Positions 5,525 through 61,947 of a DNA stretch of 64,000 nucleotides are shown one piece after another. How positions within the stretch are numbered: the first letter of the stretch is position 1; each line of letters opens with the position of its first letter. The notes under the pieces were generated by a model. The model had not been told where the DNA came from. It searched no databases and saw only the letters and a program-made list of their open reading frames with translations. This DNA comes from Lepidodermella squamata (Eukaryota > Animalia > Gastrotricha): contig JBLDXI010000013.1 in the NCBI GenBank assembly GCA_047495785.1, forward strand, positions 2,356,001 through 2,420,000, written 5' to 3'. The translations under genes and the position numbers were made by a program.

Positions 5525-6582
5525 CTGCAATAAAATGCTACCAATTGTAAGAGTGACAATTTTTGTTTGAATTCCAAACCCTTTGCCGATCTGACCTTCA
5601 ATATTTCGGTCCTGCCTTAAAAATTCGGCATAAACCGTATCTATACGCTCCATTCATCTCACCCGACCTTTTAACTTATTTGCTCTAAATTAGCATAAAA
5701 GGCTGACGTTTTATCTGACGTTTTTTACCCCGAATCATTTCGGCATGCAAATCGTCCAAAGGAGGTTCGCTAGAACCGCTCATTTATGGTTTAGGTGAAC
5801 ACGAGACACTTCTCACGCCTTCCTTGCGGCTGATTCTGTGATTGCATCAATACCTGTCGGCAGAAGGCAGAAAGCTGTTGGTCAGAAGTCGGTTTCGCGC
5901 CACTGGTCTAACAAGATATGTGTACCTCCAACCCAATTCCGGGAACATTATTCCGAGTGACTCGAGAGAAAACCGTTTACATTAGCATACTCTATGTTTC
6001 TGCGCGTCAAAGGCATTACGCCATTTGTTTCATTTCCGACACACTGTTCCCACGATATCGTGACACATTCAGTGCACCAGAGTACGTGCAGTAGGCGGCG
6101 ATTATAGCGTCGATACAGTTTCATTTTGGTAAATCTAGCCTGGACAAATTTAATAGTTTTAAATGTCATGATGTCATGGCAGTCTAGTCTAGATATCGTG
6201 ACGCTTCACTATAGAGATGATCAGTCATGGACCGTAAAAATTATAAAATGAGATATTACACGCCAGCAGTGTATTGTGTAGGCATTCAGAAGGTTTCCTA
6301 TCTCAGAGGGGGAATATTGTTAGCAACGGATGCGCAAACACCCCTCATGACTTACAACTTTGATAATACGATGTATGCATCCGCTAGCAACACGCCTTTA
6401 ACCATACCAAAACACAGGTTAATATGACCTGACACTTTAGATAAATGAGCCTCGCAATTACAAAGCTGTTATTATAGTTCTTATTCAGAAATTTAAAGCT
6501 GCAGATAAGCCCCGCCAAAAACTTGCTATATAAGGAAGGAGATATTTAGTAAAATAAGCAGCTATATACCGCAAAAAACATT

Positions 6583-24526: not shown

Positions 24527-27486
24527 TCACTCGTATTTCAACGGAGAGCCTGAGTTAGGGTTCGCGTAACCGTTCGCTTGAGGCTGAAACTGATGCCGGT
24601 ACATTTGATACGGCTGTTGATTGCCGAATTGCGACTGGGGATGAGTCATCAGCAACATGGCTGATTGCTGCTGCTGCTGCTGTTGTTCCAACATAAATTG
24701 CTGGCTGTTATGCTGCTGCTGCTGTTGTTGATTCAGCATCATTTGCTGGTGCATCACATGCTGCTGCTGCTGATTGGGTTGGATAATACCGCCCTGTCCG
24801 TATACATGCGCGTACTGCTGCGGCAATTGGCCCCAAATCGGCGCGACAAATTGATTATGCTGCTGTTGCTGCTGCTGCTCCATAACCTGAGGTTCAGCCT
24901 TAGCCGCCCCCATGTCCTGTTGCGGAGGGAAGGTAGGCTGGCCAGGGAAATTAGGCTGGTTTTGCCGGAACATCATGTCACCAGTTGCCATTTTCGAGCC
25001 GTCAATTGGCGACTGCCGATTAGCCGGGTTCGAGAAAATAAACGCCTGTGCCTGTGGTTGTTGAGTCATCGGTTTCTGGAAAAACGACGGCGGCGTCGAG
25101 TCGGACATGGCCGAAATCACCGAGGTCGACGATTGCGGCGAGTGGGCCGCCGACGCGTCGCTCGCCCTCGCGACAACAGCGCGGAGATCCGCGAGTTTCA
25201 GCAGCAACTTCGCCATGCGATGCTGCTGGTTCTTCGCCTGATCGTCGTTTGAACTCAACTTGGCATTCGGCTCACCCGAACTAGGCGCCTCGGTGATTTT
25301 CCGCAACGCCGCGACAGTTCGGTCGAGTATGGTGTCTAAACGCGACCCATTCGTCAAACCAGCCCTGTCGGCATTCAGCAAACACGTCGCGGCCATCAGA
25401 GATACTTCGACTTCATTCAACGCTAATTCTCGACATCCGCCAACGAACTGGTTGAAATCATGCATCCCGGCGGGGCCCAGCGCCTCTAAAACGGCCTGGG
25501 TTGACGGGGTCGTCGGCCTGGCGCCCTGTTTCGGCGACTCATTTGCGGTTGTAGTCGAACTGTCCTCCATTACTACATCACTCCGCTCAGGCGATGTAAG
25601 GGCGAAGCAGTGGTCGAGTAGGATAACTTCAGCGCCAGCCCGCCTGATCAAACATAACTGGTCAGTTTGGGACAGAGCGTTGAATTCCGGGATTAGAGCC
25701 GCCCGGGCGAATGCGGCAACTCGGCGCCCGGCTGGCGACGAAACCGATAGAATACCGGCGCCTCGATTGCTGCCGCTTGACGACGCGGTTGAAGCTGTTG
25801 AAGTTATCAGCCGCTCAGCGTTGATGTTGGTCAAACTGCCGGCTAATTCTGACCCGGCGTAACCGTGGTCCGATTGCGGCGAGTCGGAACTTGCCAGGCC
25901 AACCCGTTCCTCGCCGCCGCTGCTACCCGGCGCGCCTTCGTTGCTGTCGTAGTCCGGGTCGAGAAGGCTGTTCAACAGGCCGACGTTGGTTGAGGAGGAT
26001 GAGGCGGACGATGTTAGAGTCGTCGCGCTGCGGAAATGTATCCTATACGCTTCGACTATCGCCTCAGTCGACGCCCGAGTTTCCTTCGGCATAGCAGCTA
26101 AAATTGAGTTGTAGTAGTCGCCGAGAATCGAGGCAGGGGAAGACGTGGCTGCGTTAGCTTGAGTAGGTTGAGTACTAGCAGCGCCGCCAGACCGCCGCCG
26201 TTTCCGGCCCTCATGTCTCACAGCTATAAAAAAACAAGTTTTAAGGAGGAATTTTAATTTTGTTTCACAACAAACCTTCTTTCGACATGCCGCTAGTGAG
26301 GCATTTCTGGAACCGGCAAAACTGGCATCGATTTCGAGTTAGCTTATTGATATCGCACTTCCGCTCCTTGTGACACTGGTACTGCATGTTCTTCTGAACA
26401 GATCGCCGGAAGAAGCCTTTACAACCCTCGCACGCCGACACGCCGTAGTGATAGCCGCTGGATTTATCCTGGCAAACTACGCACGGCTTGTAGACACGAG
26501 GCGGTGGGCTGTTGTCGACCTCGCTACCAGGTAGCCCTAGCAACACCCCACGCCCGCCCGCCATCGGCCCGTGGTGCCCGGCCGCCGCGGCTGCCACGAC
26601 TGCCGCGTACGCCATTTGCTGCTGGTGGTAATGCATAGCGGCGGCCGCGTCGTGGCCGTTCGCCTGGTGGTGATGGTGAAAATGAGCGGCTTGGTCCATC
26701 ATCAACATTTGTTGCTGCTGTTGTTGCTGTTGCTGCTGGTTGTTCGAAGCGTCACCAGGACCGCCGATGATGGGCGTCGGCGGCGCCATGTACTCGGTGA
26801 ACGATTCGGGGCTGGAGTCTTGGAACGATTTCTTCAACTGCTCTTCAACTATAGTATCGAGCGGAAATCCTGTTAAACAAACAAATATTACGTTAAAATG
26901 AACTTAAAATCGTAGATCAAAGTAAATTTACCGTCAGTTTGAAGTGTGGAGTCGAATTCGTGGTGTTGCCCCATCGCCGGGTGATGGTAGGCCCCGTGGT
27001 ACTGGTTGAGCAGCACCATTCCAGCGTGATGTTCTTGGTGTTGCTGTTGATACGGACCACTATTCGGCGCGAAAAGTGTCGCATAGCCACCGTTGCCGTT
27101 GACCGTCGACGTGAACGCGGCGTACTGCGGAGGCGCTTGTTGCGCCTGGCTGGGCGGCGCCGATACGGGCGTTGGCGCACCGCTGTGTTGGTACGGCGAT
27201 GGCGCCTCGCCAGGCGACGGGTAAACTGAGCTAAAATCCCCGCCGTTTTGCTGCGAAGGCGGCGGAAACATTCTATTTGTAGCCGACTGTTGTTGATACT
27301 GGTCGGTCATTTCTAAAATTCAGTAATTCGGGTAAAAAAATATTGAGAAATTAAGGCGGTTTTTTTCGAACCACGATTGCTGAAATGAGTAGGAATTGTC
27401 GGAGTTCGCCTAACGCTTGGCGGGCCGTTGCTGCCTGGAGTTGAAGGCGGAACATAGCAGGTCGGCGAAGGCGACGGTTTGATCAT
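24527..27486 (-). CDS. RAR: Retinoic acid receptor (NR1B) orthologue with divergent ligand-binding domain
   Basis: RAR-diagnostic [67 protein letters not shown] remnants [29 protein letters not shown] and [10 protein letters not shown]. Four exons join in frame. The first exon (ATG 27486) is less certain than the alternative ATG at 27310. Confidence 0.88.
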
Positions 27487-30123: not shown

Positions 30124-33100
30124 TTAGAACAACCGATGCTGCTGCGGCTGCGGGTCGCCGAGGGACAGCGGATGAGCTCCGGCAGGCGCGAGATTCGCCG
30201 CCGAGCGCGAGTACCACGGCCGGCGTCCGCGCGGCATCGCATCGGGCCCGCCGATCGCAAACTGCGACGGAGCTGCAAAATTGCTGGCCGGGAACACGCG
30301 CTGCCCATTCGTCATCGTGTGAAACAACGGCGGATTCATCGCTTGCTGCTCCGCTTGTTGCTGGGTGACTTGCTGCTGCTGCTGTGGTATCGCCATCGAG
30401 CTTTGCAGCAGGATATTCACGACACTCGCAGCCGCTACGACAGCCGCGTGGCACGACGCGATAACCCGCTCGTTTTTCACGGTTATGCCCGCAGTTTGTT
30501 GGCTCTGATACGGCGCAGTCGGCACAACAGGCGGCGGCATAGCCAAAACCGCCTCGAGACGGCCGGTTGCCGCCAGCGCCTTCTCAACCGCCCCCAAAAC
30601 GTTATCTCTCAGCCCGTGAGTCGTTGGCAATTGACACGCCGTTGAGGTGGATAGGCGGCAAATAGTCCTCGCCTGTTCCGCAACAAACTGGGCCTGTAAC
30701 ATCAAATCAGCCGTTGAGTTCAACGGGCCGTTTCCGGTGCTAAACGCCGCAACAGCTCCGTCCATCGCCGACAAATTTTCAGCATGGCGACGTAGCTGCC
30801 GTAAATGGTCGAGTAACGACGGCTGAGACCCGGATCGTCTCACAAAACTCGCCACATTTTGCTGCTGTTGCTGCTGGTTCTGTTGAACAGTGTAGGGTCG
30901 ATTGGTAGTCGGGCCTAACGGGCTGCCGTTTTGCGCCAAAATTCCGCGGCGGGGCAATGAGCCCTGCCTGAAACCATTCGGCGGAGTTGCGCTCGTGCAA
31001 AGCGACTCCGCTGAGCAGAATGCGGACGAAAGTTGGTGATTGCCGGGCGAGCCTTGCGTCGCCGCGGCAAAGTTTGACATCATTTGCGGCGGGGAGTAAG
31101 AGGTTGGCGAGGCGAACAGGCCGGGCGGACCTACCAGGTCGGCTTGATTCTGCTTTCCCGCTGCCGCATTCAACGCGTTCGATGTCGCGACAGTCCGATC
31201 GCGAAGGGTGGCTAACAATCGCACCGTGCAGTCGTTCCACGCAACAGCGAAGGACCGGAACGATTCGCGGGAGACTCGACTGACCGGATTCGGAAATTGT
31301 TCAAACAGGACCTTAAAAAAGAAACAAAATCAATATTTGGTGTCGATTGGTTTGAGAAATCTTTGAGCAGTGGAAATTCAAAACAATAATCCCAAATAGA
31401 CCCTAACTTTTTGAAACGTACGAGAGTCTAACAGTCCTTTTAACCACAGAAAAAATCAAATAATCAAAAAAACTGGGCCACGATACAGAAAGGACAGACT
31501 CTGCACTAGTAACTAAACAATCATTTCCGTTCTAGTAATATGGATAGGGTTTGAAAAAACTATTTGACACATTTGACGCGAATAATAGGATAGCAATTTC
31601 CATTACCCGATACAAAAAAATCCCATGCAATACCCTTAGGGGAATTTTACATCGCCTAAATTACGCGCAGTTATTGATTGTCAATTATGCATATTTAATA
31701 GGTGAGAAAAAATTCATGGCAGAAATTTTTTGTTTTCTCAAATATAAATTTCCTTCCAATATCCAATGTCCAAAAATGAGGGAAAGTGATGACATATCAG
31801 CGTCATTCCTCAGAGATCAGGTTCTAAATGTCAGTGATTAGTATTAATAAAAAAATGTAGTAAGGGATTGCTTTGTAATAAGAAGAATCACGTGAGTCCA
31901 CCGGGCAAATTTCTGGAAAAACCAAGCGGCCCACACGATCGAATCATGCTAGTCTGAATCGGGCGTCAGATTACCACGAAATCCTCTACAGACGGATGCG
32001 CCGCGTCACATAATGAGAAAATAAAATGTTGACACAGTGGCGCTCGAAATAGATATATGCGGATAAAAAAATCATCATAATACAAAGCTATTTGTATTAA
32101 AAATTAGCAGATAAGCCGGCGATGCCGCGCGTCGCCTAATTTATTCATGTGCTTACTTGAGCAGAAGCTGACAAAGCAGCAGCAATCAGGCGCAGCCAGG
32201 CCAAAACGTGTTCGGCGTCGATCAGCAGACACTCGTTGGGCGCGACGTGGCGGAAAAGCCGAGCCGCTTCGACCGCCAAATCCGCGCGTTGCTCGAAATG
32301 CGCGACCGAACAGCGGAAGGCCGTCTGGTCACCGGACAGGGCCACGAATTCCAATTGGTTAATCAACGTCGCGTAGTCTTCGATGGCTGCAGATTCCGAG
32401 ACGTCCGGGGTGGACTGCGAGATTTTGCTCCGGCTGGGTAGAGACGACCGCGAATCGAGAGACGCGTTCGCCAATTGTTCCGCAGTTCTTTGACACTCGG
32501 CTTGTAAGAAAGTGACGATATCCACCAATCGATTCACGGCTATTCTCACATTTTCGGCGCGAGCTTCCGCACTAACCTCGCCGCTTTGTTGTCCCTCCGG
32601 GGTTTGAGCCTGTTCCGCTATTTGACAAGTCTCGGCTCGCAACCTATCGAGAAGGCCTAGCAACCGCTCCCGACTTGCATGCGGGGTGTAGGCGCAGTCG
32701 GTGAAATCTTGCAAGGCATCGGCAAGCCGATTTACCTCCGTATCTAGCCGCCGAATCGCGACAGAACCAGCGCTGTAAAACGCCTCGCCGTCAACTAACG
32801 ATCGAACATTTGCGACTAGATCACGCAGGGGCGGCATTGAATCACTCCGAACGGCTCGAGAGGATCCGGCGACCGGAAAACCGGAATCGCCAGTCGTCCC
32901 CGATGAGTCAGAATCACTTTGTGGGACAATATTTTGCCCACCATTAGTCACACTGATTGTGTCATTCATAGTTTGGCCGACGCTTTGTAACGCTTGCCGC
33001 ATCATTCTTAGAATAGAATCACGAACTCGGGCGGCTGCGACTGATTCAGGGTGACGTAGACAGGTTTTCGCAGCCGCTAGTAACAACTGAGTACCTCGTT

Positions 33101-34469
33101 CAAGGGTCGCTCGACTCACCGCTAGTGATTCTCGGTCTTTATCTCGCCGTAAATCGGCCTGGCGATCTCCGGATAGATGAGCGAGCTCAACGAGGGCTCG
33201 ACCTAATTCTGAAAAGGTTGCTACAAATTCCGCCAGGGCAGCTGTTGGCCTAGCGCTGACATTTTCTAGCTCATTCAACCAGTATGAGACGCGGTCTCTT
33301 GCCGCCATTATTTGTTTCACGCAGAGTTTATCTGCTAGCAATAAAACTTTTGTTATCGAACTCAGTAGCTGCCTCGATGTAGCGACGACTGCTAACGAGT
33401 CCGGAGCACCAGGAGATATGTTTGGGTTTCGAGACGGCGAACCACCTCGAGACGTAGTTCCGCCTTGTTTTGTGATATCAGTGAGTCGGCGTAGTTCTAG
33501 CGCAGCAGCTTGCACTTCGTTACAAGCTTCGCGCATTTCCAACGCCGCGTCTGGGTATTCTTCTGCCAGCGACTCGCCAACTGCGACGAATTTATCAGCG
33601 GCGGCTGCGACGAGAAGCCCAACACGAGCCGCATGTTGCTGGGCCACACTACCCGGTCTTAGGGTCCCGGTACTACCCTGTTGTTGCTGCACGGTCGCCG
33701 GACTCTGACTACCCGCTCGAGAGCTCACCAGGGAGTTGATCTGCAAATTATTCGATGTCAAATTTAATACAAAATTCTCCAATTTACGCGCCGAAATAAA
33801 TCTAATTATCTGCTAGTAATAAAACAATTACGCAAAATAACGAGGGTGCTAAACGCAACAAGTGTCGGGAAGTATGATTTTTTTGCGCAAAACACAATCG
33901 CTCGTGATCATCGGAGCAAAAACAGCGCGCAAGTGCATGCGCGGAAATTCAATAGTAAAAAATGTGCAGACCTCGCGCGCATACAATGAAATAAAATCGA
34001 TTGCCGACGACAAGGCGGAAGCAAGTACTCTCGTGTAATAATTGCAAGATTTTTCCAAATGCCAAATGCGAAAATAATGACACTATGGACTACCAAAAGG
34101 CGACTACTACGGTTGATTGACGAGTTGCGTATATGAGACAATCGAACGCTGATTTTCAAATATACTGGCAAGTTATGCGACAGATTATGCATACAAATAC
34201 CATGCGCCACTTCCAAGTAAAAACTAAATAACGCATCTCACAGGACTACGCTTTATTCTTCTGGCTGATGCAAATTTAGGGTGCTAGGAGCGCCAAACTC
34301 TACCAAAGTACAACGCTAAAAAATAACGTACTTGAGATAACAGCGGTAGTAGCGTTTTCTCAATAGAGCGAGTTCTGATGTCATCTGAAAGCTGGAGAGA
34401 TGATGTGCTGCGAGGTTGACGATTGCCAGGTGCATCAGCAAGATTGTCAGCCGAGTAAGCGCAATCCAT
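30124..34469 (-). CDS. CTNNAL1: Alpha-catulin (vinculin/alpha-catenin family), 3 exons
   Basis: IRTRSIEKTLLPLLSQ|INSLV.., KFVAVGESLAEE, LLSSITKVLLLAD, ELAHLSGDRQADL, DFTDCAYTPHASRERLL, SLPRRG, FSTGNGPLNSTADLMLQAQFVAEQA. Exons ~34469-34332, ~33741-32157 and ~31311-30124. Confidence 0.88.
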
Positions 34470-42916: not shown

Positions 42917-44348
42917 ATGCCATCCAATCACGTTGATTATCCCATTACCCGTTTCCACAATTGCCGAGTTGTGCAATTTCACGAACCCATTAAAGGAGAA
43001 TTCGTGTCGGCTAATACTGATGAAATCTGGATAAGAGCTGGACGCGTGATTGATTCTCAGCATGCATTTTACCGAGAACAGCAACGGCCTGAAATAGATA
43101 TTGACTGCAAGGGTGCAATAGTTGCTCCCGGATTGATTGACCTGCAAGTTAACGGTGGATGGGGTATTGATTTCAGCTGTATGGAAAACCCCGAAAATGG
43201 ACTACGAACTGTTGCGAAAAATCTCCTCAAACACGGCGTGACTTCATTTTGTCCAACAATTGTTTCTTCTACCACTAATGTATATCGCAGTATGGTACCT
43301 TTTCTGGGACCAAGGAAAGGCTGCTCGGAATTCGGAGCCGCTGTATTAGGTGCTCACCTTGAGGGGTATATCCGTTACAAATGCAAATTGATTCTTTTTC
43401 AATTATAATTAATAGGCCTTTCATTTCTCCAACAAAAATCGGTTGCCATGACCCGGCAAATGTGACGGTGCCTAAGCGAGGATTCGAATCAGTATTAGAA
43501 ATGTATGGTGGAGATGACTTGATCAAAAACGTGGCAATAGTCACCATCGCTCCAGAAATCGAAGGTAAGGCTAACGAGCTGAAATACCCGCGAATTTTAA
43601 GCTGTGAATTAAACAGGAGCGTTGTCCGCTATTGAAGGACTTTCGCGAAAAGGTGTATTGGTCTCACTCGGTCACTCCTCCGCCTCGATCGCGGATGGTG
43701 AAAAAGGGGTACTTGCTGGTGCTAGATGTGTCACACATCTTTTCAATGCTATGCTTCCCTTCCACCATCGTGACCCTGGCCTTCTCGGTTTACTCGCAAT
43801 GGAAACTGATACCGAAACGCCGTCGCCGAGTCAAACAGTCATGCATTTCGGGATAATTGCTGACGGCATTCACGCTCATCCAGCAGCACTACGAGTAGCT
43901 CACCGCATGGCCCCTAGCTCTCTTTGTTTAGTTTCTGATCAAGTCCTTGCGGCTGGACTGCCGGACGGGCGTCATAATTTTCCTGGTTTGGGTCGGCACA
44001 TCGAGGTATTTTTCTTATCTTGCAATCATCGACATCATTGATTCAATATCATCGTAAATCTAGCTTTCTGGTAGAAGAGCCACTCTGGTGGATCAGCCTG
44101 AGACCCTGGCAGGGGCTGCTACTCTACTTGACGAATGTGTTCGCATCTTCAAGCAAGTTACTGGCTGTTCTATTGATTATTCGCTGGCAGCAGCTTCAAA
44201 ACACCCCGCAGCTGCTCTTCGGCTGCTCGAGAAAGGCCAGTGTGGATCGCTGGCCGTAGGATCTGTAGCAGATTTAATTCTTGTCGATCCAGCCGACTTC
44301 ACTATCAATGCTACATATCTAGCTGGCGAACGTGTTTATTCGAAATGA
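42917..44348 (+). CDS. AMDHD2: N-acetylglucosamine-6-phosphate deacetylase, 4 exons
   Basis: PGLIDLQVNG, GVTSFCPT, GAHLEGPFIS, SLGHS, THLFNAM, HHRDPG, IADGIH, TLAG and ADL motifs. Confidence 0.95.
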
Positions 44349-58108: not shown

Positions 58109-59256
58109 ATGTCTGGAGATTCGGTGTTGAGGTGGGGCTTGGTAGGTGTCGGAATCATTACCCAAGATTTTCTACTGGCGATTCGACGGGCAGGACTCAA
58201 ACGCCATCGTCTTGTTGGCCTGGCCTCTTTATCCTCACCTGATAAAGCCCGAGAACTGGCTGAGAAGTTTGGAATCGAGAAAACTTACTCGAGTTATGAT
58301 GAGATGTTTGCGAATCCTGAAATAGGTATAGTATCTTAGTAATAGACTGAATTTTCAAGTTTTTACAGGATTTCCTGAAAACAGATGCGATTTACATCGG
58401 TTTGGTCCACCATCAACATTACCCGGTAGCTAAGGCTGCTCTACTGGCTGGTAAGGCCGTTCTTTGCGAGAAACCCCTCGCTTGCTCCTTGGAAGAAACC
58501 ATGGACCTGGTCGAAACAAGCCGCAAGACCAAAACCCTGCTAACCGAAGCGTTATGGTCGGCATTCTGCCCATCGTACGCCCGAGTTCGCGAGCTGATTT
58601 CAAACGCAAGCCCCGTCTCGCTTCAGGTGACGTTCACCCTAGCCTTCCCGGACCGCCCACCCCGGCCCGACAACCCGAAAATCGGCTACAACAGCGCCAT
58701 GTGGGGCATTGGAATTTACGCGGTTCATTTTGCCACGCTGGTTTTCGGCCCGAACCCGCGCCACGTTGCAGCTACTGGCCGCGTAGATTCGAACCACGTC
58801 GATCGCGGCGAATCGATAACTCTGCAGTATGGCCCGGAGAGTTCGCCTAAATTGGCTAGTCTGCTCGTAGACACCCAAAGCGGTGCGCCGAGCGATTGCG
58901 TCGCTACAATTTTCTGCCACGCCGGTAACCCAGCCGGCATTACAGCCATCAAAATCGCGCCTGAATTTTGGATGCCGAGTCGCATTGAAATTATCAAGGC
59001 GGATGGCTCGTCGACAGTCGAGCATTTCCCACTGCCAGGCGTTGTTGACGAGAAATTTAAGGCGGATAAATTTTTCCTACTCAACAGCGAGGGCCTGGCC
59101 TACGAAGCTGATGCTTTCGCGGATATTGTCGACGCGTGGAAGAAGTCGAATGGTACGGTTATTGAACACCCGCTGCGAAGCCATGAACAAACGATAAGTG
59201 ATGCGCGAGTCATGCAGACTTCTCTGGAAATGATTCGCAAGCAGCACAATGCGTGA
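58109..59256 (+). CDS. DHDH: Gfo/Idh/MocA oxidoreductase, DHDH-like paralog 1
   Basis: LRWGLVGVGII, KAVLCEKPL, EALWS..P, GIY and GLAYEA; one intron (~58326-58385). Confidence 0.9.
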
Positions 59257-59398
59257 CAAAATCTAAGTTGATTCTGACATACCGACGATTTTTCTCGAAC
59301 TATTTTTCGTTGATTTTTGATGCGGAATTCTCTATTTTTTCGATTAAATTGCTTTACCTATCCATTACTGAATAATTTTAGATTTTCTTGAATTATTG

Positions 59399-60635
59399 AT
59401 GGCATTGAAGTGGGGAATAATTGGCTGCGGTGGAATCAGCAATGATTTCTGTTTGTCGATTTTTCGAGCAAAATTTCCCCGCCATAAGTTGGTTGGAGCA
59501 GCATCTCGTTCTTCGCTCGAATCGGCCCAAAAATTCGCCAAGAAATTCAACATGCCAAAAGCTTTCGGAACTTACGATGAGCTTTTCGCCGACCCAGAGA
59601 TAAGTAAGGAAAATTGCGAGTTCATAAATGATTTAGAACAGAATTAAATTAAATTAAATCTTGAAATCGATTAAATTGAATCTTATTGAAAACATATTTG
59701 ATGTTTTCAGATGCGGTTTATATTGGAAATTTGAACCCTGATCACTTGGCAGCGGCATTGGCAGCTATCGATGCCGGAAAAGCCGTTTTATGCGAGAAAC
59801 CGCTGACCCTGAGCGGTGCAGATGACAAGCGAATTTTCGAAGCTGCCAAGGCTAAGGGTGTCCTAGTCGTTGAGGCGCTTTGGTCTCGCTTCAATCCGGT
59901 CTATGAGAGGATTCGTCAGCTATTGAAAACCCACAAGCCCGCAGCTTTATCCGTCAACTTCACGGTTGCAATCGAAAACAAGGATCGAGTCGCAAAGCCG
60001 GAATTTGGGTTCGTTCTATTCAATTCTCATCCGAACTTAAATTCATAATTTTATTCAGAGGGAGTGCCATGTTGGATATTGGCATCTACTGCGTCCAACT
60101 CGCCACCATGGTTTTCGGAGGGCAAGCTCCGACTAAAGTTTTAGCCAACGGCCAGCTGAACGACCTTGGGGTCGATATTGCCGAGAGTGTCTCCCTGGGC
60201 TACGCAGACGGTGGCCATGCCGCCCTGCTGATCGACGCCCGAAGTGGCAGTCCATCAATTTGCGAGGCTAAGGTCTTCTTCCTCCCCGGCGGTGAGTACA
60301 CCTCGGCTAAAATCGGCGCCCCGTTCTGGACGCCGACTCATTTGGAGCTGACCAAAACCGATGGGACAACGGTTAGGGAGGATTTCCCGCTGTTCCCGAA
60401 TGTCGATACTAATGATGGTTTGAGCTTTACCTTCGATAACAGTCAAGCCCTCGCGTATGAAGCCGATGGTTTTGCGGATGCGTTTGAAAAATGGCAGGCG
60501 ACCCGCGGCACTGAAAATCCGGTTATTGAACACCCGCTGCGGACACACAAGGACACGCTGATCGACGCGCATATCATGGACACGGTCATGGCTCAGCTGA
60601 AACGCCAGGCCCGAGCTGATTCAATTAAACAATGA
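59399..60635 (+). CDS. DHDH: DHDH-like paralog 2
   Basis: LKWGIIGCGGISNDF, AVLCEKPL, EALWSRFNP, AMLDIGIY and LAYEA; two introns. Confidence 0.92.
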
Positions 60636-60778
60636 TTACCTATACTTCAAAACAATCGAAATTCCATGACATTTGTTTGCCGTGCTAATTTTTTTGTGGC
60701 GTTGAATTAAATTTTATTTTGATGATTTCTTTTTTTCGGCTGAATAAAATCGTGTAATTTAGTAGGACGATTTTTATT

Positions 60779-61947
60779 ATGACCGTCGTTCAGTTGAAAT
60801 GGGGTATAATCGGCTGCGGGGCTATCAGTAACGATTTCGCCCTAGCGATTCATCGACTGAAATCACCCCGCCACAAATTGGTTGGCGCTGCCTCGAGATC
60901 TTCGGCAGAATCGGCTAAAAAATTCGCCGCTCGTTTCAAAATGCCGAAATTTTTCGGGTCTTACGAGGAATTATTCGCTGACCCTGAAATAAGTTCGTCC
61001 GCAATTGAGTAAAAGTAGTATTTAGAGCTGTTTTTTCAGATGCCGTTTATATCGGAAATCTGAACCCAGACCATCTGACGGCGGCCTTAGCTGCTATTGA
61101 GGCTGGGAAGGCGGCTCTTGTCGAGAAACCACTGACAATGAATCTGGAGGATGATAGGAAAATTTTCGAAGCTGCTAAGAACAAGGGTGTTCTCGTTATG
61201 GAAGCCGTTTGGTCGAGATTCAACCCGGTTTACGAGCGAATTCGTCAATTATTGAAGGAAGGCTGCCACAAACCGGCGGCTGTTTCAGCAAATTTCACTT
61301 GTGAAATAAACACTGATCGTATCGCAAAACCAGAATTGGGGTGAATTTTCGTACTAAAATATTTTTTTAATTATTTTTATTTTAATTTTATCAGGGGCAG
61401 TGCAATGCTTGATATCGGAATTTACTGCCTACAGCTGGCCACCATGGTTTTTGGTTATCAGGCCCCGACAGCAATTCATGCAATTGGGGCTGTCAATGAA
61501 TTTGGTGTCGATGTTGCTGAAAGCGTGTCGCTGGAATATCCCGAAGGTGGCCATGCCTCGTTATTGGTTGACAAACGTACAGGGTCTTGGAGCTCATGTG
61601 AGGCCCGGGTGTTTTTCCGCAGCGGCGCCGAGTTCACATCTGCTAAAATTTGTGCACCTTTCTGGGCGCCAACTCGGCTCGAATTGACCCGAGCTGATGG
61701 CACTAGCGTGGTAGAGGATTATCCCATTTACCCGAATTTGGCTGATGATGATGGTCTGGATTTTGTTTTCGTAAACAGTCAAGCTCTAGCGTACGAAGCG
61801 GAAGGATTCGCCGATGCGTTTGAAAAGTGGATGGCTTCAAAAGGCTCCGCGAACCCTGCTATCGAACACCCTCTTCGGACTCATGGTGATACACTAATTG
61901 ATGCTGCTGTAATGGAAGAAATAATTTCTCAAGTGAGGAAAAATTAG
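60779..61947 (+). CDS. DHDH: DHDH-like paralog 3
   Basis: LKWGIIGCGAISNDF, ALVEKPL, EAVWSRFNP, AMLDIGIY and LAYEA; same two intron positions as paralog 2. Confidence 0.92.

What the first reader, a model, noticed from the sequence alone, without database searches (positions are those of the whole stretch)
24527..26230. RAR with conserved DNA-binding domain but apparently dismantled ligand pocket and AF-2, plus a new poly-Q tail
Seen, aligned by eye to the recalled vertebrate RAR sequence. Helix 5 DILILRICTRY corresponds to [11 protein letters not shown], so both arginines are gone, including the one that binds the retinoic acid carboxylate. The TFSDG turn is VMEDS, FAKRLP is FARAALIP, and the T-box VRNDR is VRHEG. 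There is a long Ser/Gly-rich insert before helix 3. The AF-2 helix PPLIQEML has at best a vestige (TPPSFFQK) without the conserved Glu, followed by ~180 Gln-rich residues. Established: some mollusc RARs are RA-insensitive but keep a recognisable AF-2. Inference: a ligand-independent RAR that may activate through a Q-rich domain or act as a repressor.
Basis: partly seen in the sequence, partly recalled or inferred. Interest (0 to 1): 0.72.

Follow-up and report, generated by a model that had tools for sequence, protein, structure and literature searches.

The report
Gastrotrich RAR without retinoid pocket or AF-2
A small invertebrate (probably a gastrotrich) has a selected, intact copy of the retinoic acid receptor gene with a near-perfect DNA-binding half, but its hormone-binding half has lost almost every retinoic-acid contact and the usual activation helix and has gained a long glutamine-rich tail.

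Summary
A four-exon minus-strand gene (27486-24527, 928 codons) encodes a nuclear receptor. Its DNA-binding domain is unmistakably RAR (NR1B): 135-139 bits to solved RAR DBDs against 93 or less for any other receptor. All 120 best database hits are RARs or RAR-like, and the RAR clade has 100/98 support.

The last exon (24527-26223) holds a real nuclear-receptor LBD fold from H1 to H11 (Z about 18). It is extremely derived:
- Only 1 of 25 retinoic-acid contact positions is kept, against 10-15 in other invertebrate RARs.
- Both helix-5 arginines and the turn serine are gone.
- No helix 12 is predicted, and the AF-2 glutamate kept by every other RAR sampled is absent.

A 186-residue tail with 28% Gln follows. 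The single orthologue found (a syntenic metagenome contig) shows the same losses, so they are old.

Selection is clear. Allelic differences run 26 synonymous to 7 non-synonymous. The LBD helices are 70-83% identical at saturated synonymous sites.

A 17-residue tail motif is invariant and may be a new regulatory element or a displaced helix 12.

The LBD alone favours RAR but cannot exclude NR1D/NR1E (AU p 0.10-0.13). No RNA data were found, and function is untested. I rate it a new variant of a known kind.

The parts
27372..27486 (-). Exon 1 (start ATG 27486-27484; begins [11 protein letters not shown]...)
   Evidence: Frame translation and sequence. It matches the N-terminus of orthologue P0001. 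The GT donor is at 27371-27370.
26932..27312 (-). Exon 2, A/B domain (Q/P-rich)
   Evidence: Sequence shows AG at 27314-27313 and GT at 26931-26930. It is 43% identical to P0001 residues 38-148.
26276..26869 (-). Exon 3: rest of the A/B domain (poly-Q, His/Ala-rich) plus the whole DBD
   Evidence: ORF. The junction QTDG|FPLD matches P0001's contiguous SDGFPLE. Pfam zf-C4 scores 109.7 bits.
26277..26483 (-). RAR-type DNA-binding domain ([23 protein letters not shown] ... GMSKE), preceded by PPPRVYKP
   Evidence: phmmer against PDB gives RAR alpha/beta/gamma 135-139 bits and the next family 93 bits or less. All 120 best hits are RAR or RAR-like. The DBD tree places it in the RAR clade at 100/98.
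26224..26275 (-). Intron 3 (52 nt, GT...AG), between GMSKE and the T-box
   Evidence: Sequence. The prokaryote-style gene call of P0001 reads through the equivalent intron.
24527..26223 (-). Exon 4: T-box/hinge, LBD and Q-rich tail; stop TGA at 24529-24527
   Evidence: Pfam Hormone_recep scores 51.3 bits. It is 51% identical to P0001 over 523 columns.
26006..26086 (-). Helix 1 (exon-4 residues about 46-72)
   Evidence: AlphaFold models give pLDDT 81-95. It aligns to RAR H1 and is 69% identical to the orthologue.
25742..26005 (-). Ser/Gly-rich insert between H1 and H3 (about 90 residues, disordered)
   Evidence: pLDDT is below 50. It is an insertion relative to most RARs.
25823..25888 (-). Conserved island inside the insert ([22 protein letters not shown]), predicted helical and resembling a corepressor-box pattern (LxxIxxxxL)
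   Evidence: 79% identical to the orthologue while the flanks are 33-59%. A helix is predicted at residues 124-143 with low pLDDT.
25145..25735 (-). LBD core, H3 to H11 (exon-4 residues 163-359)
   Evidence: pLDDT is mostly 85-96. VIA-align gives Z 17-18.5 with 185-200 residues aligned to FXR, TR, VDR and RAR LBDs. Foldseek's best match is Rev-erb alpha.
25598..25630 (-). Helix 5, [11 protein letters not shown]: both RAR arginines replaced (R274 to D, R278 to A)
   Evidence: Alignment A2. The orthologue has Q and T at these positions.
25559..25573 (-). Former beta-turn, VMEDS (F288 to M, S289 to E), followed by a loop about 17 residues longer than in RARs
   Evidence: No strands are predicted and pLDDT is below 50 for residues 217-236.
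25073..25096 (-). TPPSFFQK, at the position where PPLIxEML (AF-2 core) aligns; no Glu, not helical
   Evidence: pLDDT is below 50 and no helix is predicted. The orthologue differs here (TPSISSTLQQF).
24530..25087 (-). C-terminal tail, 186 residues, 28% Gln
   Evidence: Allelic differences are mostly synonymous here too. There is an in-frame CAG-repeat length variant at 24710.
24794..24844 (-). Invariant tail motif [17 protein letters not shown] (exon-4 residues 460-476)
   Evidence: 17/17 identical in the orthologue. With its flanks (residues 456-477) it is the most conserved segment of the exon, at pN 0.076 with saturated pS. In 4 of 50 structural alignments the aligned range reaches residues 477-478 and the C-terminal end of the FXR/VDR chains, where H12 lies; pLDDT there is below 50.

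Best explanation
This is the NR1B (retinoic acid receptor) orthologue of a small spiralian animal. An earlier scan note says it is probably a gastrotrich; I did not verify this.

Shown:
- The DBD is a fully conserved RAR DBD, so the protein should still read RAR-type direct-repeat elements.
- The LBD keeps the nuclear-receptor helical sandwich (H1, H3-H11). This includes the signature region and the well-conserved H9-H10 stretch that other RARs use to pair with RXR.
- The LBD is under purifying selection.
- The retinoic-acid pocket residues are almost all replaced. The carboxylate anchors are gone: L233 to V, K236 to P, R278 to A, S289 to E.
- The beta-turn is replaced by a disordered loop.
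- There is no canonical helix 12 or AF-2 glutamate.

Inferred:
- The receptor no longer senses retinoic acid.
- It cannot form the canonical charge clamp for p160-type coactivators.
- It works as a ligand-independent DNA-bound partner, most likely with RXR.
- Its default output is probably repression through the permanently open H3-H4 groove, as in Rev-erb.
- Modulation or activation is supplied by the new C-terminal extension (the invariant [17 protein letters not shown] motif and the Gln-rich segments) and possibly by the RXR partner's ligand, as proposed for mollusc RARs.
For: DBD identity.

Gene structure and intact reading frame.

LBD fold: Pfam; AlphaFold with core pLDDT 85-96; Z 17-18.5 to NR1 LBDs covering H1-H11 only; Foldseek's best hit is the H12-less Rev-erb alpha.

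Pocket: 1 of 25 positions kept (3 of 25 in the orthologue), against 10-15 in echinoderm, brachiopod, mollusc, annelid, nemertean and bdelloid RARs and 5-7 in Rev-erb/E78.

AF-2: the glutamate is present in all other RAR rows and absent here.

No AF-2-like coding potential in the 64-kb window or in orthologous contig L001.

The same state is seen in the syntenic orthologue P0001, which also has a vinculin gene upstream.

Selection: 26 synonymous to 7 non-synonymous allelic differences. Helices are 70-83% identical and the tail motif segment (residues 456-477) is 91% identical, the 17-residue motif itself being invariant, at saturated synonymous sites.

LBD-only tree: inside the RAR/TR/rotifer clade at 99/97, on a branch of 3.24 substitutions per site.

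Literature: mollusc RARs do not bind RA and probably act as constitutive repressors (PMC7827873, PMC8363021). A rotifer RAR keeps only 3 of 25 pocket residues (PMC6947571).
Against: - No RNA evidence: the only run holding the locus is genomic contigs, so the 3' end and the isoforms are unverified.
- The LBD alone does not significantly exclude an NR1D or NR1E affinity (AU p 0.128 and 0.104). The RAR+gastrotrich grouping has only 62/78 support.
- The outgroup sampling is thin: no ROR, VDR, LXR or EcR sequences were available as protein ids.
- The H3 alignment (W227 to G) depends on MAFFT across a long insert.
- Repression, RXR pairing and DNA binding are inferred, not tested.
- The invariant tail motif could restore an AF-2-like function.
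- The list of 25 contact positions is recalled from the RAR-gamma literature. Only L233, K236, R278, S289 and F230 were confirmed in a paper read here (PMC6947571).
Confidence: 0.6

Rival explanations
1. Helix 12 is displaced, not lost. The invariant tail motif ([17 protein letters not shown], with PIWGQL resembling PLIQEM and YAHVY resembling an LxxLL-type pattern) folds back over the LBD after a disordered linker of about 100 residues. It then acts as a surrogate AF-2 or as an in-cis groove blocker. The receptor would still be switchable, perhaps by a non-retinoid ligand or by phosphorylation of the conserved [10 protein letters not shown] stretch.
For: The motif with its flanks (residues 456-477) is the most conserved segment of exon 4 (pN 0.076, the 17-residue motif itself 17/17 identical) inside an otherwise 26-44% identical tail. 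In 4 of 50 VIA alignments the aligned range runs on to residues 477-478, and the FXR/VDR chains are covered to their helix-12 ends. The positive groove residues are kept as Arg (K246R, K264R).
Against: pLDDT over residues 434-482 is below 50, and only a 3-residue helix is predicted. The Gly and Pro inside the motif disfavour a helix. The clamp glutamate is Gln at best. 46 of the 50 alignments stop at H11. No contact map could be inspected.
Confidence: 0.15
2. Chimeric or non-orthologous LBD. An RAR DBD is joined to an LBD that derives from another NR1 group (Rev-erb/E75- or E78-like), or the whole gene is a lineage-specific NR1 orphan whose DBD merely stayed RAR-like.
For: By sequence the LBD scores slightly higher to Rev-erb (33.8 bits) and VDR (31) than to vertebrate RAR (25). 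The best profile hit in 1.84 billion proteins is a bivalve NR1D at 46.6 bits. Foldseek's top hit is Rev-erb alpha. AU tests do not reject NR1D or E78 grouping.
Against: The maximum-likelihood LBD tree puts it with RARs (99/97 for the RAR/TR/rotifer clade). Mollusc, nemertean and brachiopod RAR LBDs score about as well (28-31 bits by phmmer; 38-44 bits by the profile search). The hinge, T-box and H1 run on from the RAR DBD without a break, and one short intron is the only junction. Rapid divergence (a 3.24 subs/site branch) explains the weak signal without a swap.
Confidence: 0.1
3. A canonical AF-2 is supplied by an unseen alternative 3' exon or isoform, and the Q-rich tail belongs to only one of several products.
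For: There are no RNA data, so isoforms cannot be excluded.
Against: tblastn with H11-H12 peptides of 11 receptors finds only chance-level matches in the window and in L001 (E 0.59 or more among the rows read; the printout was cut at 6,000 characters). The next gene downstream starts within about 900 bp. The tail is in frame, conserved at both ends in the orthologue and shows synonymous-biased polymorphism.
Confidence: 0.05
4. A decaying gene on its way to loss, as in flatworms, which lack RAR.
For: The LBD is extremely divergent. RAR is absent from all flatworms analysed (PMC8363021).
Against: The 928-codon frame is intact across four exons with clean splice sites. Allelic changes run 26:7 synonymous to non-synonymous. 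LBD helices are 70-83% conserved at saturated dS, and the orthologue is intact.
Confidence: 0.02

Closest known systems
Mollusc RARs (e.g. Nucella lapillus NlRAR; NR1B)
   Same: These are RAR orthologues with a conserved DBD. They bind response elements with RXR but do not bind retinoic acid, and are thought to be constitutive repressors (PMC8363021, PMC7827873).
   Different: Mollusc RARs still keep 14-16 of the 25 pocket positions (9-11 differ, PMC6947571; 15 kept). They keep R274 and a canonical PPLVIEML helix 12 with the glutamate. The gene here keeps 1 of 25, has no helix 12 and adds a 186-residue Q-rich tail.
Rotifer RAR (Brachionus koreanus RAR in PMC6947571; bdelloid RAR-like proteins P0005-P0017)
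   Same: A spiralian RAR with about 78-84% DBD identity and a very divergent LBD (20% identity, 3 of 25 pocket residues in the monogonont; PMC6947571). The DBD shares YQCHK, C[ED]INK and CRFQKC with the gene here.
   Different: The bdelloid proteins keep both helix-5 arginines (LRLAYRY), the turn serine and an AF-2 core with glutamate (CIFEVL). Their LBDs give no phmmer hit to this LBD at E up to 10.
Rev-erb / NR1D (and E75)
   Same: Vertebrate Rev-erb has an NR1 LBD that lacks helix 12 and so recruits corepressor constitutively. It is the best sequence and Foldseek match of this LBD.
   Different: The DBD differs (93 bits or less against 139 for RAR). Rev-erb binds haem through residues not examined here. 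The tree does not place this LBD with NR1D, though that grouping is not rejected.
Platynereis dumerilii RAR (PDB 6EU9), the low-affinity ancestral-type sensor
   Same: A spiralian NR1B with a structurally superposable LBD core (Z 17-18, 187-188 residues).
   Different: The annelid receptor keeps all four carboxylate-bonding residues, binds RA and activates (PMC6947571, PMC5821490). The gene here has none of the four.

Membership tests
NR1B (retinoic acid receptor) orthology group | RAR-type DBD: P-box EGCKG, the [11 protein letters not shown] and QKNMxYxCH...INKxTRNRCQ signature, and PPPR[IV]YKPC in front | tested here: met
   135-139 bits to solved RAR DBDs against 93 or less for others. It is 75-86% identical to RARs from vertebrates to brachiopods, and all 120 best hits are RAR or RAR-like.
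NR1B (retinoic acid receptor) orthology group | Phylogenetic placement of the DBD inside the RAR clade | tested here: met
   The RAR clade has 100/98 support against NR1D, NR1E and TR. Only five outgroup sequences were used.
NR1B (retinoic acid receptor) orthology group | Phylogenetic placement of the LBD inside the RAR clade | tested here: inconclusive
   The best tree puts it in the RAR/TR/rotifer clade at 99/97, and RAR+gastrotrich gets 62/78. AU tests do not reject NR1D (p 0.128) or E78 (p 0.104) grouping.
NR1B (retinoic acid receptor) orthology group | Retinoic-acid pocket: carboxylate anchors L233, K236, R278, S289 and the hydrophobic lining (25 positions) | tested here: not met
   1 of 25 kept; the anchors are V, P, A and E. 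This defines the function rather than the descent, and mollusc and rotifer orthologues also fail it in part (PMC6947571).
NR1B (retinoic acid receptor) orthology group | Helix 12 with AF-2 core (PPL[IV]xEML) | tested here: not met
   Absent in the alignment and not predicted. The Pfam match stops at profile position 202 of 213. No such exon is found nearby.
NR1B (retinoic acid receptor) orthology group | Heterodimerisation with RXR and binding to DR1/DR2/DR5 elements | not testable with these tools
   There is only indirect support: conserved H9-H10 ([16 protein letters not shown] against PHIFAKLLMKLTDLRSI) and a conserved DBD.
NR1D (Rev-erb/E75), considered as a working analogue | NR1D-type DBD with its C-terminal extension | tested here: not met
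   The DBD groups with RAR, not NR1D.
NR1D (Rev-erb/E75), considered as a working analogue | LBD without helix 12, giving constitutive corepressor recruitment | tested here: inconclusive
   The absence of H12 is met. Corepressor binding could not be tested.

The most novel reading that the evidence does not exclude
An RAR orthologue has been rebuilt into a new type of receptor. The canonical ligand-operated helix-12 switch is replaced by two lineage-specific, strongly conserved short motifs that compete in cis for the open coregulator groove. One is a corepressor-box-like helix in the H1-H3 loop (SLTNI[NA]A[ED]RL). The other is an invariant LxxLL/AF-2-like motif about 100 residues after H11 ([17 protein letters not shown]). 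Activity would then be set by something other than a lipophilic ligand, such as phosphorylation of the conserved SP/ST stretches or the RXR partner.
Probability: 0.12. Interest if true: 0.75.

Novelty: new variant of a known kind. Interest (0 to 1): 0.5.

Why it matters
RAR evolution in protostomes is an active question. The ancestral receptor is thought to have been a low-affinity RA sensor. Molluscs lost RA binding, and flatworms and most ecdysozoans lost the gene. In the paper library searched here I found no report on gastrotrich nuclear receptors.

If the organism assignment holds, this gene shows three things:
- RAR survived in a lineage often placed next to flatworms (this placement is from my own knowledge, not from a paper read here).
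- It survived under selection with a DBD as conserved as anywhere.
- It did so after the retinoid pocket and the AF-2 switch had both gone, which is further than any RAR orthologue sampled here.

That separates two roles of RAR: DNA-bound RXR partner and hormone sensor. It also offers a natural experiment on what keeps an 'empty' LBD under selection. The invariant tail motif is a concrete candidate for a new regulatory element that can be tested directly.

Tried and rejected
**Searches for more orthologues**
- Word-based protein search with the whole last exon found only P0001, probably because Q-rich words swamped it.
- Repeating it with the LBD core alone again found only P0001.
- A profile search of 1.84 billion representatives gave 16 weak hits and only P0001 close.
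- A metagenome contig scan with the LBD profile found nothing. No further orthologues could be added.

**RNA evidence**
- The run search returned one run of genomic contigs with no joints. Splicing and the 3' end therefore rest on sequence and on comparison with P0001.

**Search for a hidden AF-2 exon**
- tblastn with 11 H11-H12 peptides gave only chance-level matches in the output read.

**Structure-based family assignment**
- All NR1 LBDs tie at Z 17-18, so the fold does not discriminate between families.

**Language-model look-alikes**
- These pointed to NR0B (SHP/DAX-1-like) clusters at 0.95, but recognition was below the reliability mark. I treated this only as a sign of an atypical LBD.

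**Earlier scan notes**
- Searches for RXR, RAR, retinoic and retinoid found nothing. Presence of RXR, ALDH1A, CYP26 or a second RAR in this genome is unknown.
- The extra contig depth over 26395-26432 (P-box coding) is best explained by the many other NR genes noted in this genome, not by a second RAR.

Each exon was used by reference, and P0001, a natural read-through call returned by the tool, served as the joined proxy.
Full report
**1. What is at the coordinates**

The ORF 24527-26221 on the minus strand (564 codons) is the last exon of a spliced gene.
- The sequence shows ...ATG TCG AAA GAA G|gt...(52 nt)...ag|CT GTG AGA CAT GAG, so the protein reads GMSKE-A-VRHEG across the intron at 26275-26224.
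- Two more short GT-AG introns (62 and 59 nt) lie upstream.
- The model is exon 1 at 27486-27372, exon 2 at 27312-26932, exon 3 at 26869-26276 and exon 4 at 26223-24527. That makes 929 codons with the stop.
- Pfam finds zf-C4 in exon 3 (109.7 bits) and Hormone_recep in exon 4. The latter scores 51.3 bits and matches profile positions 32-202 of 213, so the helix-12 end of the profile is unmatched.

Each was searched by reference.

**2. One orthologue exists**

The only close relative in 5.8 billion clustered proteins, and in an exhaustive HMMER pass over 1.84 billion representatives, is P0001.
- It is an 888-residue prokaryote-style gene call on a 10.8-kb metagenome contig (L001) that reads through the equivalent of intron 3.
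- It is 96% identical in the DBD, about 62% in hinge plus LBD, and 43% in the A/B domain.
- A vinculin-family gene lies upstream on the same strand in both loci.
- I therefore treat it as the syntenic orthologue from a related species.
I did not test that.

**3. The DBD is RAR**

- Against all solved structures, the DBD exon scores 135-139 bits to RAR alpha, beta and gamma. It scores at most 93 bits to any other receptor, including TR4, ROR, Rev-erb and RXR.
- A DBD-restricted search returned 120 best hits that are all RAR or RAR-like, from vertebrates, an echinoderm, a brachiopod, molluscs, annelids and bdelloid rotifers. They are mostly 75-86% identical; one apparently mis-assembled record labelled PPAR-gamma is 51%.
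- The RAR hallmarks are all present: [38 protein letters not shown] and GMSKE.
- In a maximum-likelihood tree the window and P0001 sit inside the RAR clade, with 100/98 support against NR1D, NR1E and TR.

**4. The LBD is a real but extreme LBD**

- AlphaFold with a 28-row alignment predicts H1 and H3-H11 with pLDDT 85-96.
- It predicts disorder for the insert of about 90 residues between H1 and H3.
- It predicts disorder where the beta-turn should be.
- It predicts no helix after H11.
- VIA-align gives Z 17-18.5 over 185-200 residues to FXR, TR, VDR, EcR and RAR LBDs, including Platynereis RAR 6EU9. The aligned range ends at H11 in 46 of 50 rows.
- Foldseek's top hits are the H12-less Rev-erb alpha LBDs.

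By sequence the LBD is about equally far from everything:
- Against solved structures: Rev-erb 33.8 bits, VDR 31, vertebrate RAR 25.
- By phmmer against the fetched proteins: mollusc and brachiopod RAR 28-31 bits.
- By the profile search of 1.84 billion representatives: bivalve NR1D 46.6 bits, nemertean RAR 43.9.

An LBD-only tree places it within the RAR/TR/rotifer clade (99/97), on a branch of 3.24 substitutions per site. RAR plus gastrotrich is recovered at 62/78. AU tests do not reject forcing it with NR1D (p 0.128) or E78 (p 0.104). RAR descent of the LBD is therefore the best reading but is not proven from the LBD alone.

**5. Pocket and AF-2**

I numbered an eel RAR-gamma row (P0075) by human RAR-gamma numbering, anchored on W227. 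The list of 25 contact positions is recalled from the RAR-gamma literature. L233, K236, R278, S289 and F230 were confirmed in PMC6947571.

Positions kept, out of 25:

| Sequence | Positions kept |
|---|---|
| Window | 1 |
| P0001 | 3 |
| Other invertebrate RARs and bdelloid RAR-likes | 10-15 |
| Rev-erb / E78 | 5-7 |

- The four carboxylate-bonding residues are V, P, A and E here.
- R274 is D, W227 is G, L268 is A and L307 is G.
- The AF-2 glutamate is present in every other RAR row, including the rotifers (CIFEVL), and is absent here.
- The aligned stretch TPPSFFQK is not conserved in P0001 (TPSISSTLQQF).
- tblastn with H11-H12 peptides of 11 receptors finds nothing better than chance (E 0.59 or more among the rows read; the printout was cut at 6,000 characters) in the window or L001.

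**6. The gene is selected**

- Contigs of the one public run that holds the locus carry a second allele.
- Of the 33 listed differences inside the coding exons, 26 are synonymous and 7 are not.
- A 3-nt indel at 24710 falls in a CAG run, so it is an in-frame Gln-length variant.
- Between the two species synonymous sites are saturated (pS about 0.85).

Amino-acid identity by segment:

| Segment | Identity to P0001 |
|---|---|
| H1 | 69% |
| H3-H5 | 70% |
| H6-H9 | 71% |
| H10-H11 | 83% |
| Island in the H1-H3 insert ([22 protein letters not shown]) | 79% |
| Stretch after H11 ([10 protein letters not shown]...) | 75% |
| Residues 456-477, holding the tail motif | 91% |
| Rest of the tail | 26-44% |

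The tail motif [17 protein letters not shown] itself is 17/17 identical. The C-terminal ends also correspond (SPLKYE against SPIKFLE). The tail is therefore translated and carries constrained short motifs. The long poly-Q helix (residues 484-525, pLDDT above 90) has no counterpart in P0001.

**7. How it most likely works**

Shown:
- An RAR DBD.
- A folded, selected LBD scaffold.
- No RA anchors.
- No canonical H12.
- Conserved short motifs in the tail.

Inferred:
- It binds RAR-type direct repeats, most likely with RXR. H9-H10 is the part most like other RARs.
- It is blind to retinoic acid.
- It cannot build the classical coactivator clamp. K246 and K264 are kept as Arg, but the Glu is missing.
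- It therefore probably behaves like Rev-erb or the mollusc RARs, as a default repressor. PMC7827873 reports mollusc RARs as likely constitutive repressors, possibly modulated through RXR.
- The tail then supplies regulation or glutamine-rich activation.

**8. A weaker alternative**

The invariant tail motif may be a displaced H12 or an in-cis groove ligand. In four of the 50 alignments the aligned range runs on to residues 477-478 and to the C-terminal end of the FXR/VDR chains, where H12 lies. pLDDT there is below 50, and I could not inspect contacts.

**9. Comparison and novelty**

- RA-insensitive RAR orthologues are known in molluscs.
- A rotifer RAR with 3 of 25 pocket residues is published (PMC6947571).
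- RAR is reported missing from all flatworms analysed (PMC8363021).
- I found no paper on gastrotrich nuclear receptors and none describing an RAR orthologue without helix 12.

Among the RARs I could sample, this is the only lineage lacking both helix-5 arginines and the AF-2 glutamate. I class it as a new variant of a known kind, with moderate interest.

**10. Limits**

- No RNA data.
- A single orthologue.
- Thin outgroup sampling.
- No access to the rest of the genome, so RXR, ALDH1A, CYP26 and a second RAR are unknown.
- All function is inferred.

Noticed in passing
window 30127-33782 (-): A vinculin-family gene (Pfam Vinculin 81 bits on the 32148-33782 ORF) lies upstream of the receptor on the same strand. 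The same neighbour sits upstream of the orthologue on L001 (1-2500), so local synteny is conserved between the two species.
   Followed up: partly
window 58402-61947 (+): Three neighbouring ORFs match GFO/IDH/MocA oxidoreductase domains (58402-59256, 60069-60635, 61405-61947). This looks like a tandem set of paralogues or exons of repeated genes.
   Followed up: no
window 24710 and 24658-24694: The second allele in the public run carries a 3-nt insertion inside a CAG run of the Q-rich tail, an in-frame polyglutamine length polymorphism. Overall the alleles differ by roughly 1-2% across the locus.
   Followed up: partly
window 24647-24772 (exon-4 residues 484-525): AlphaFold predicts one long helix with pLDDT above 90 through the Gln-rich stretch (…MMLNQQ…FMLEQQ…AMLLM…). 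The orthologue has no counterpart. It could be a coiled coil or a single alpha-helix. Contacts could not be inspected.
   Followed up: no
window 26395-26432: Contig depth nearly doubles over the P-box coding stretch and several contigs diverge on either side. This is best explained by other nuclear-receptor genes of this genome (large NR expansions are noted elsewhere in the scan) matching this most conserved 40 bp.
   Followed up: no
P0005, P0034 (bdelloid rotifers): Some bdelloid RAR-like proteins (782-792 aa) carry a BTB domain (PF00651) in front of the RAR-type DBD, an unusual fusion for a nuclear receptor. It may be a gene-model artefact or a real fusion.
   Followed up: no
window 42917-43408 (+): An ORF has a weak amidohydrolase-family match (E about 1e-3, below the Pfam cut-off). 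It was not examined further.
   Followed up: no
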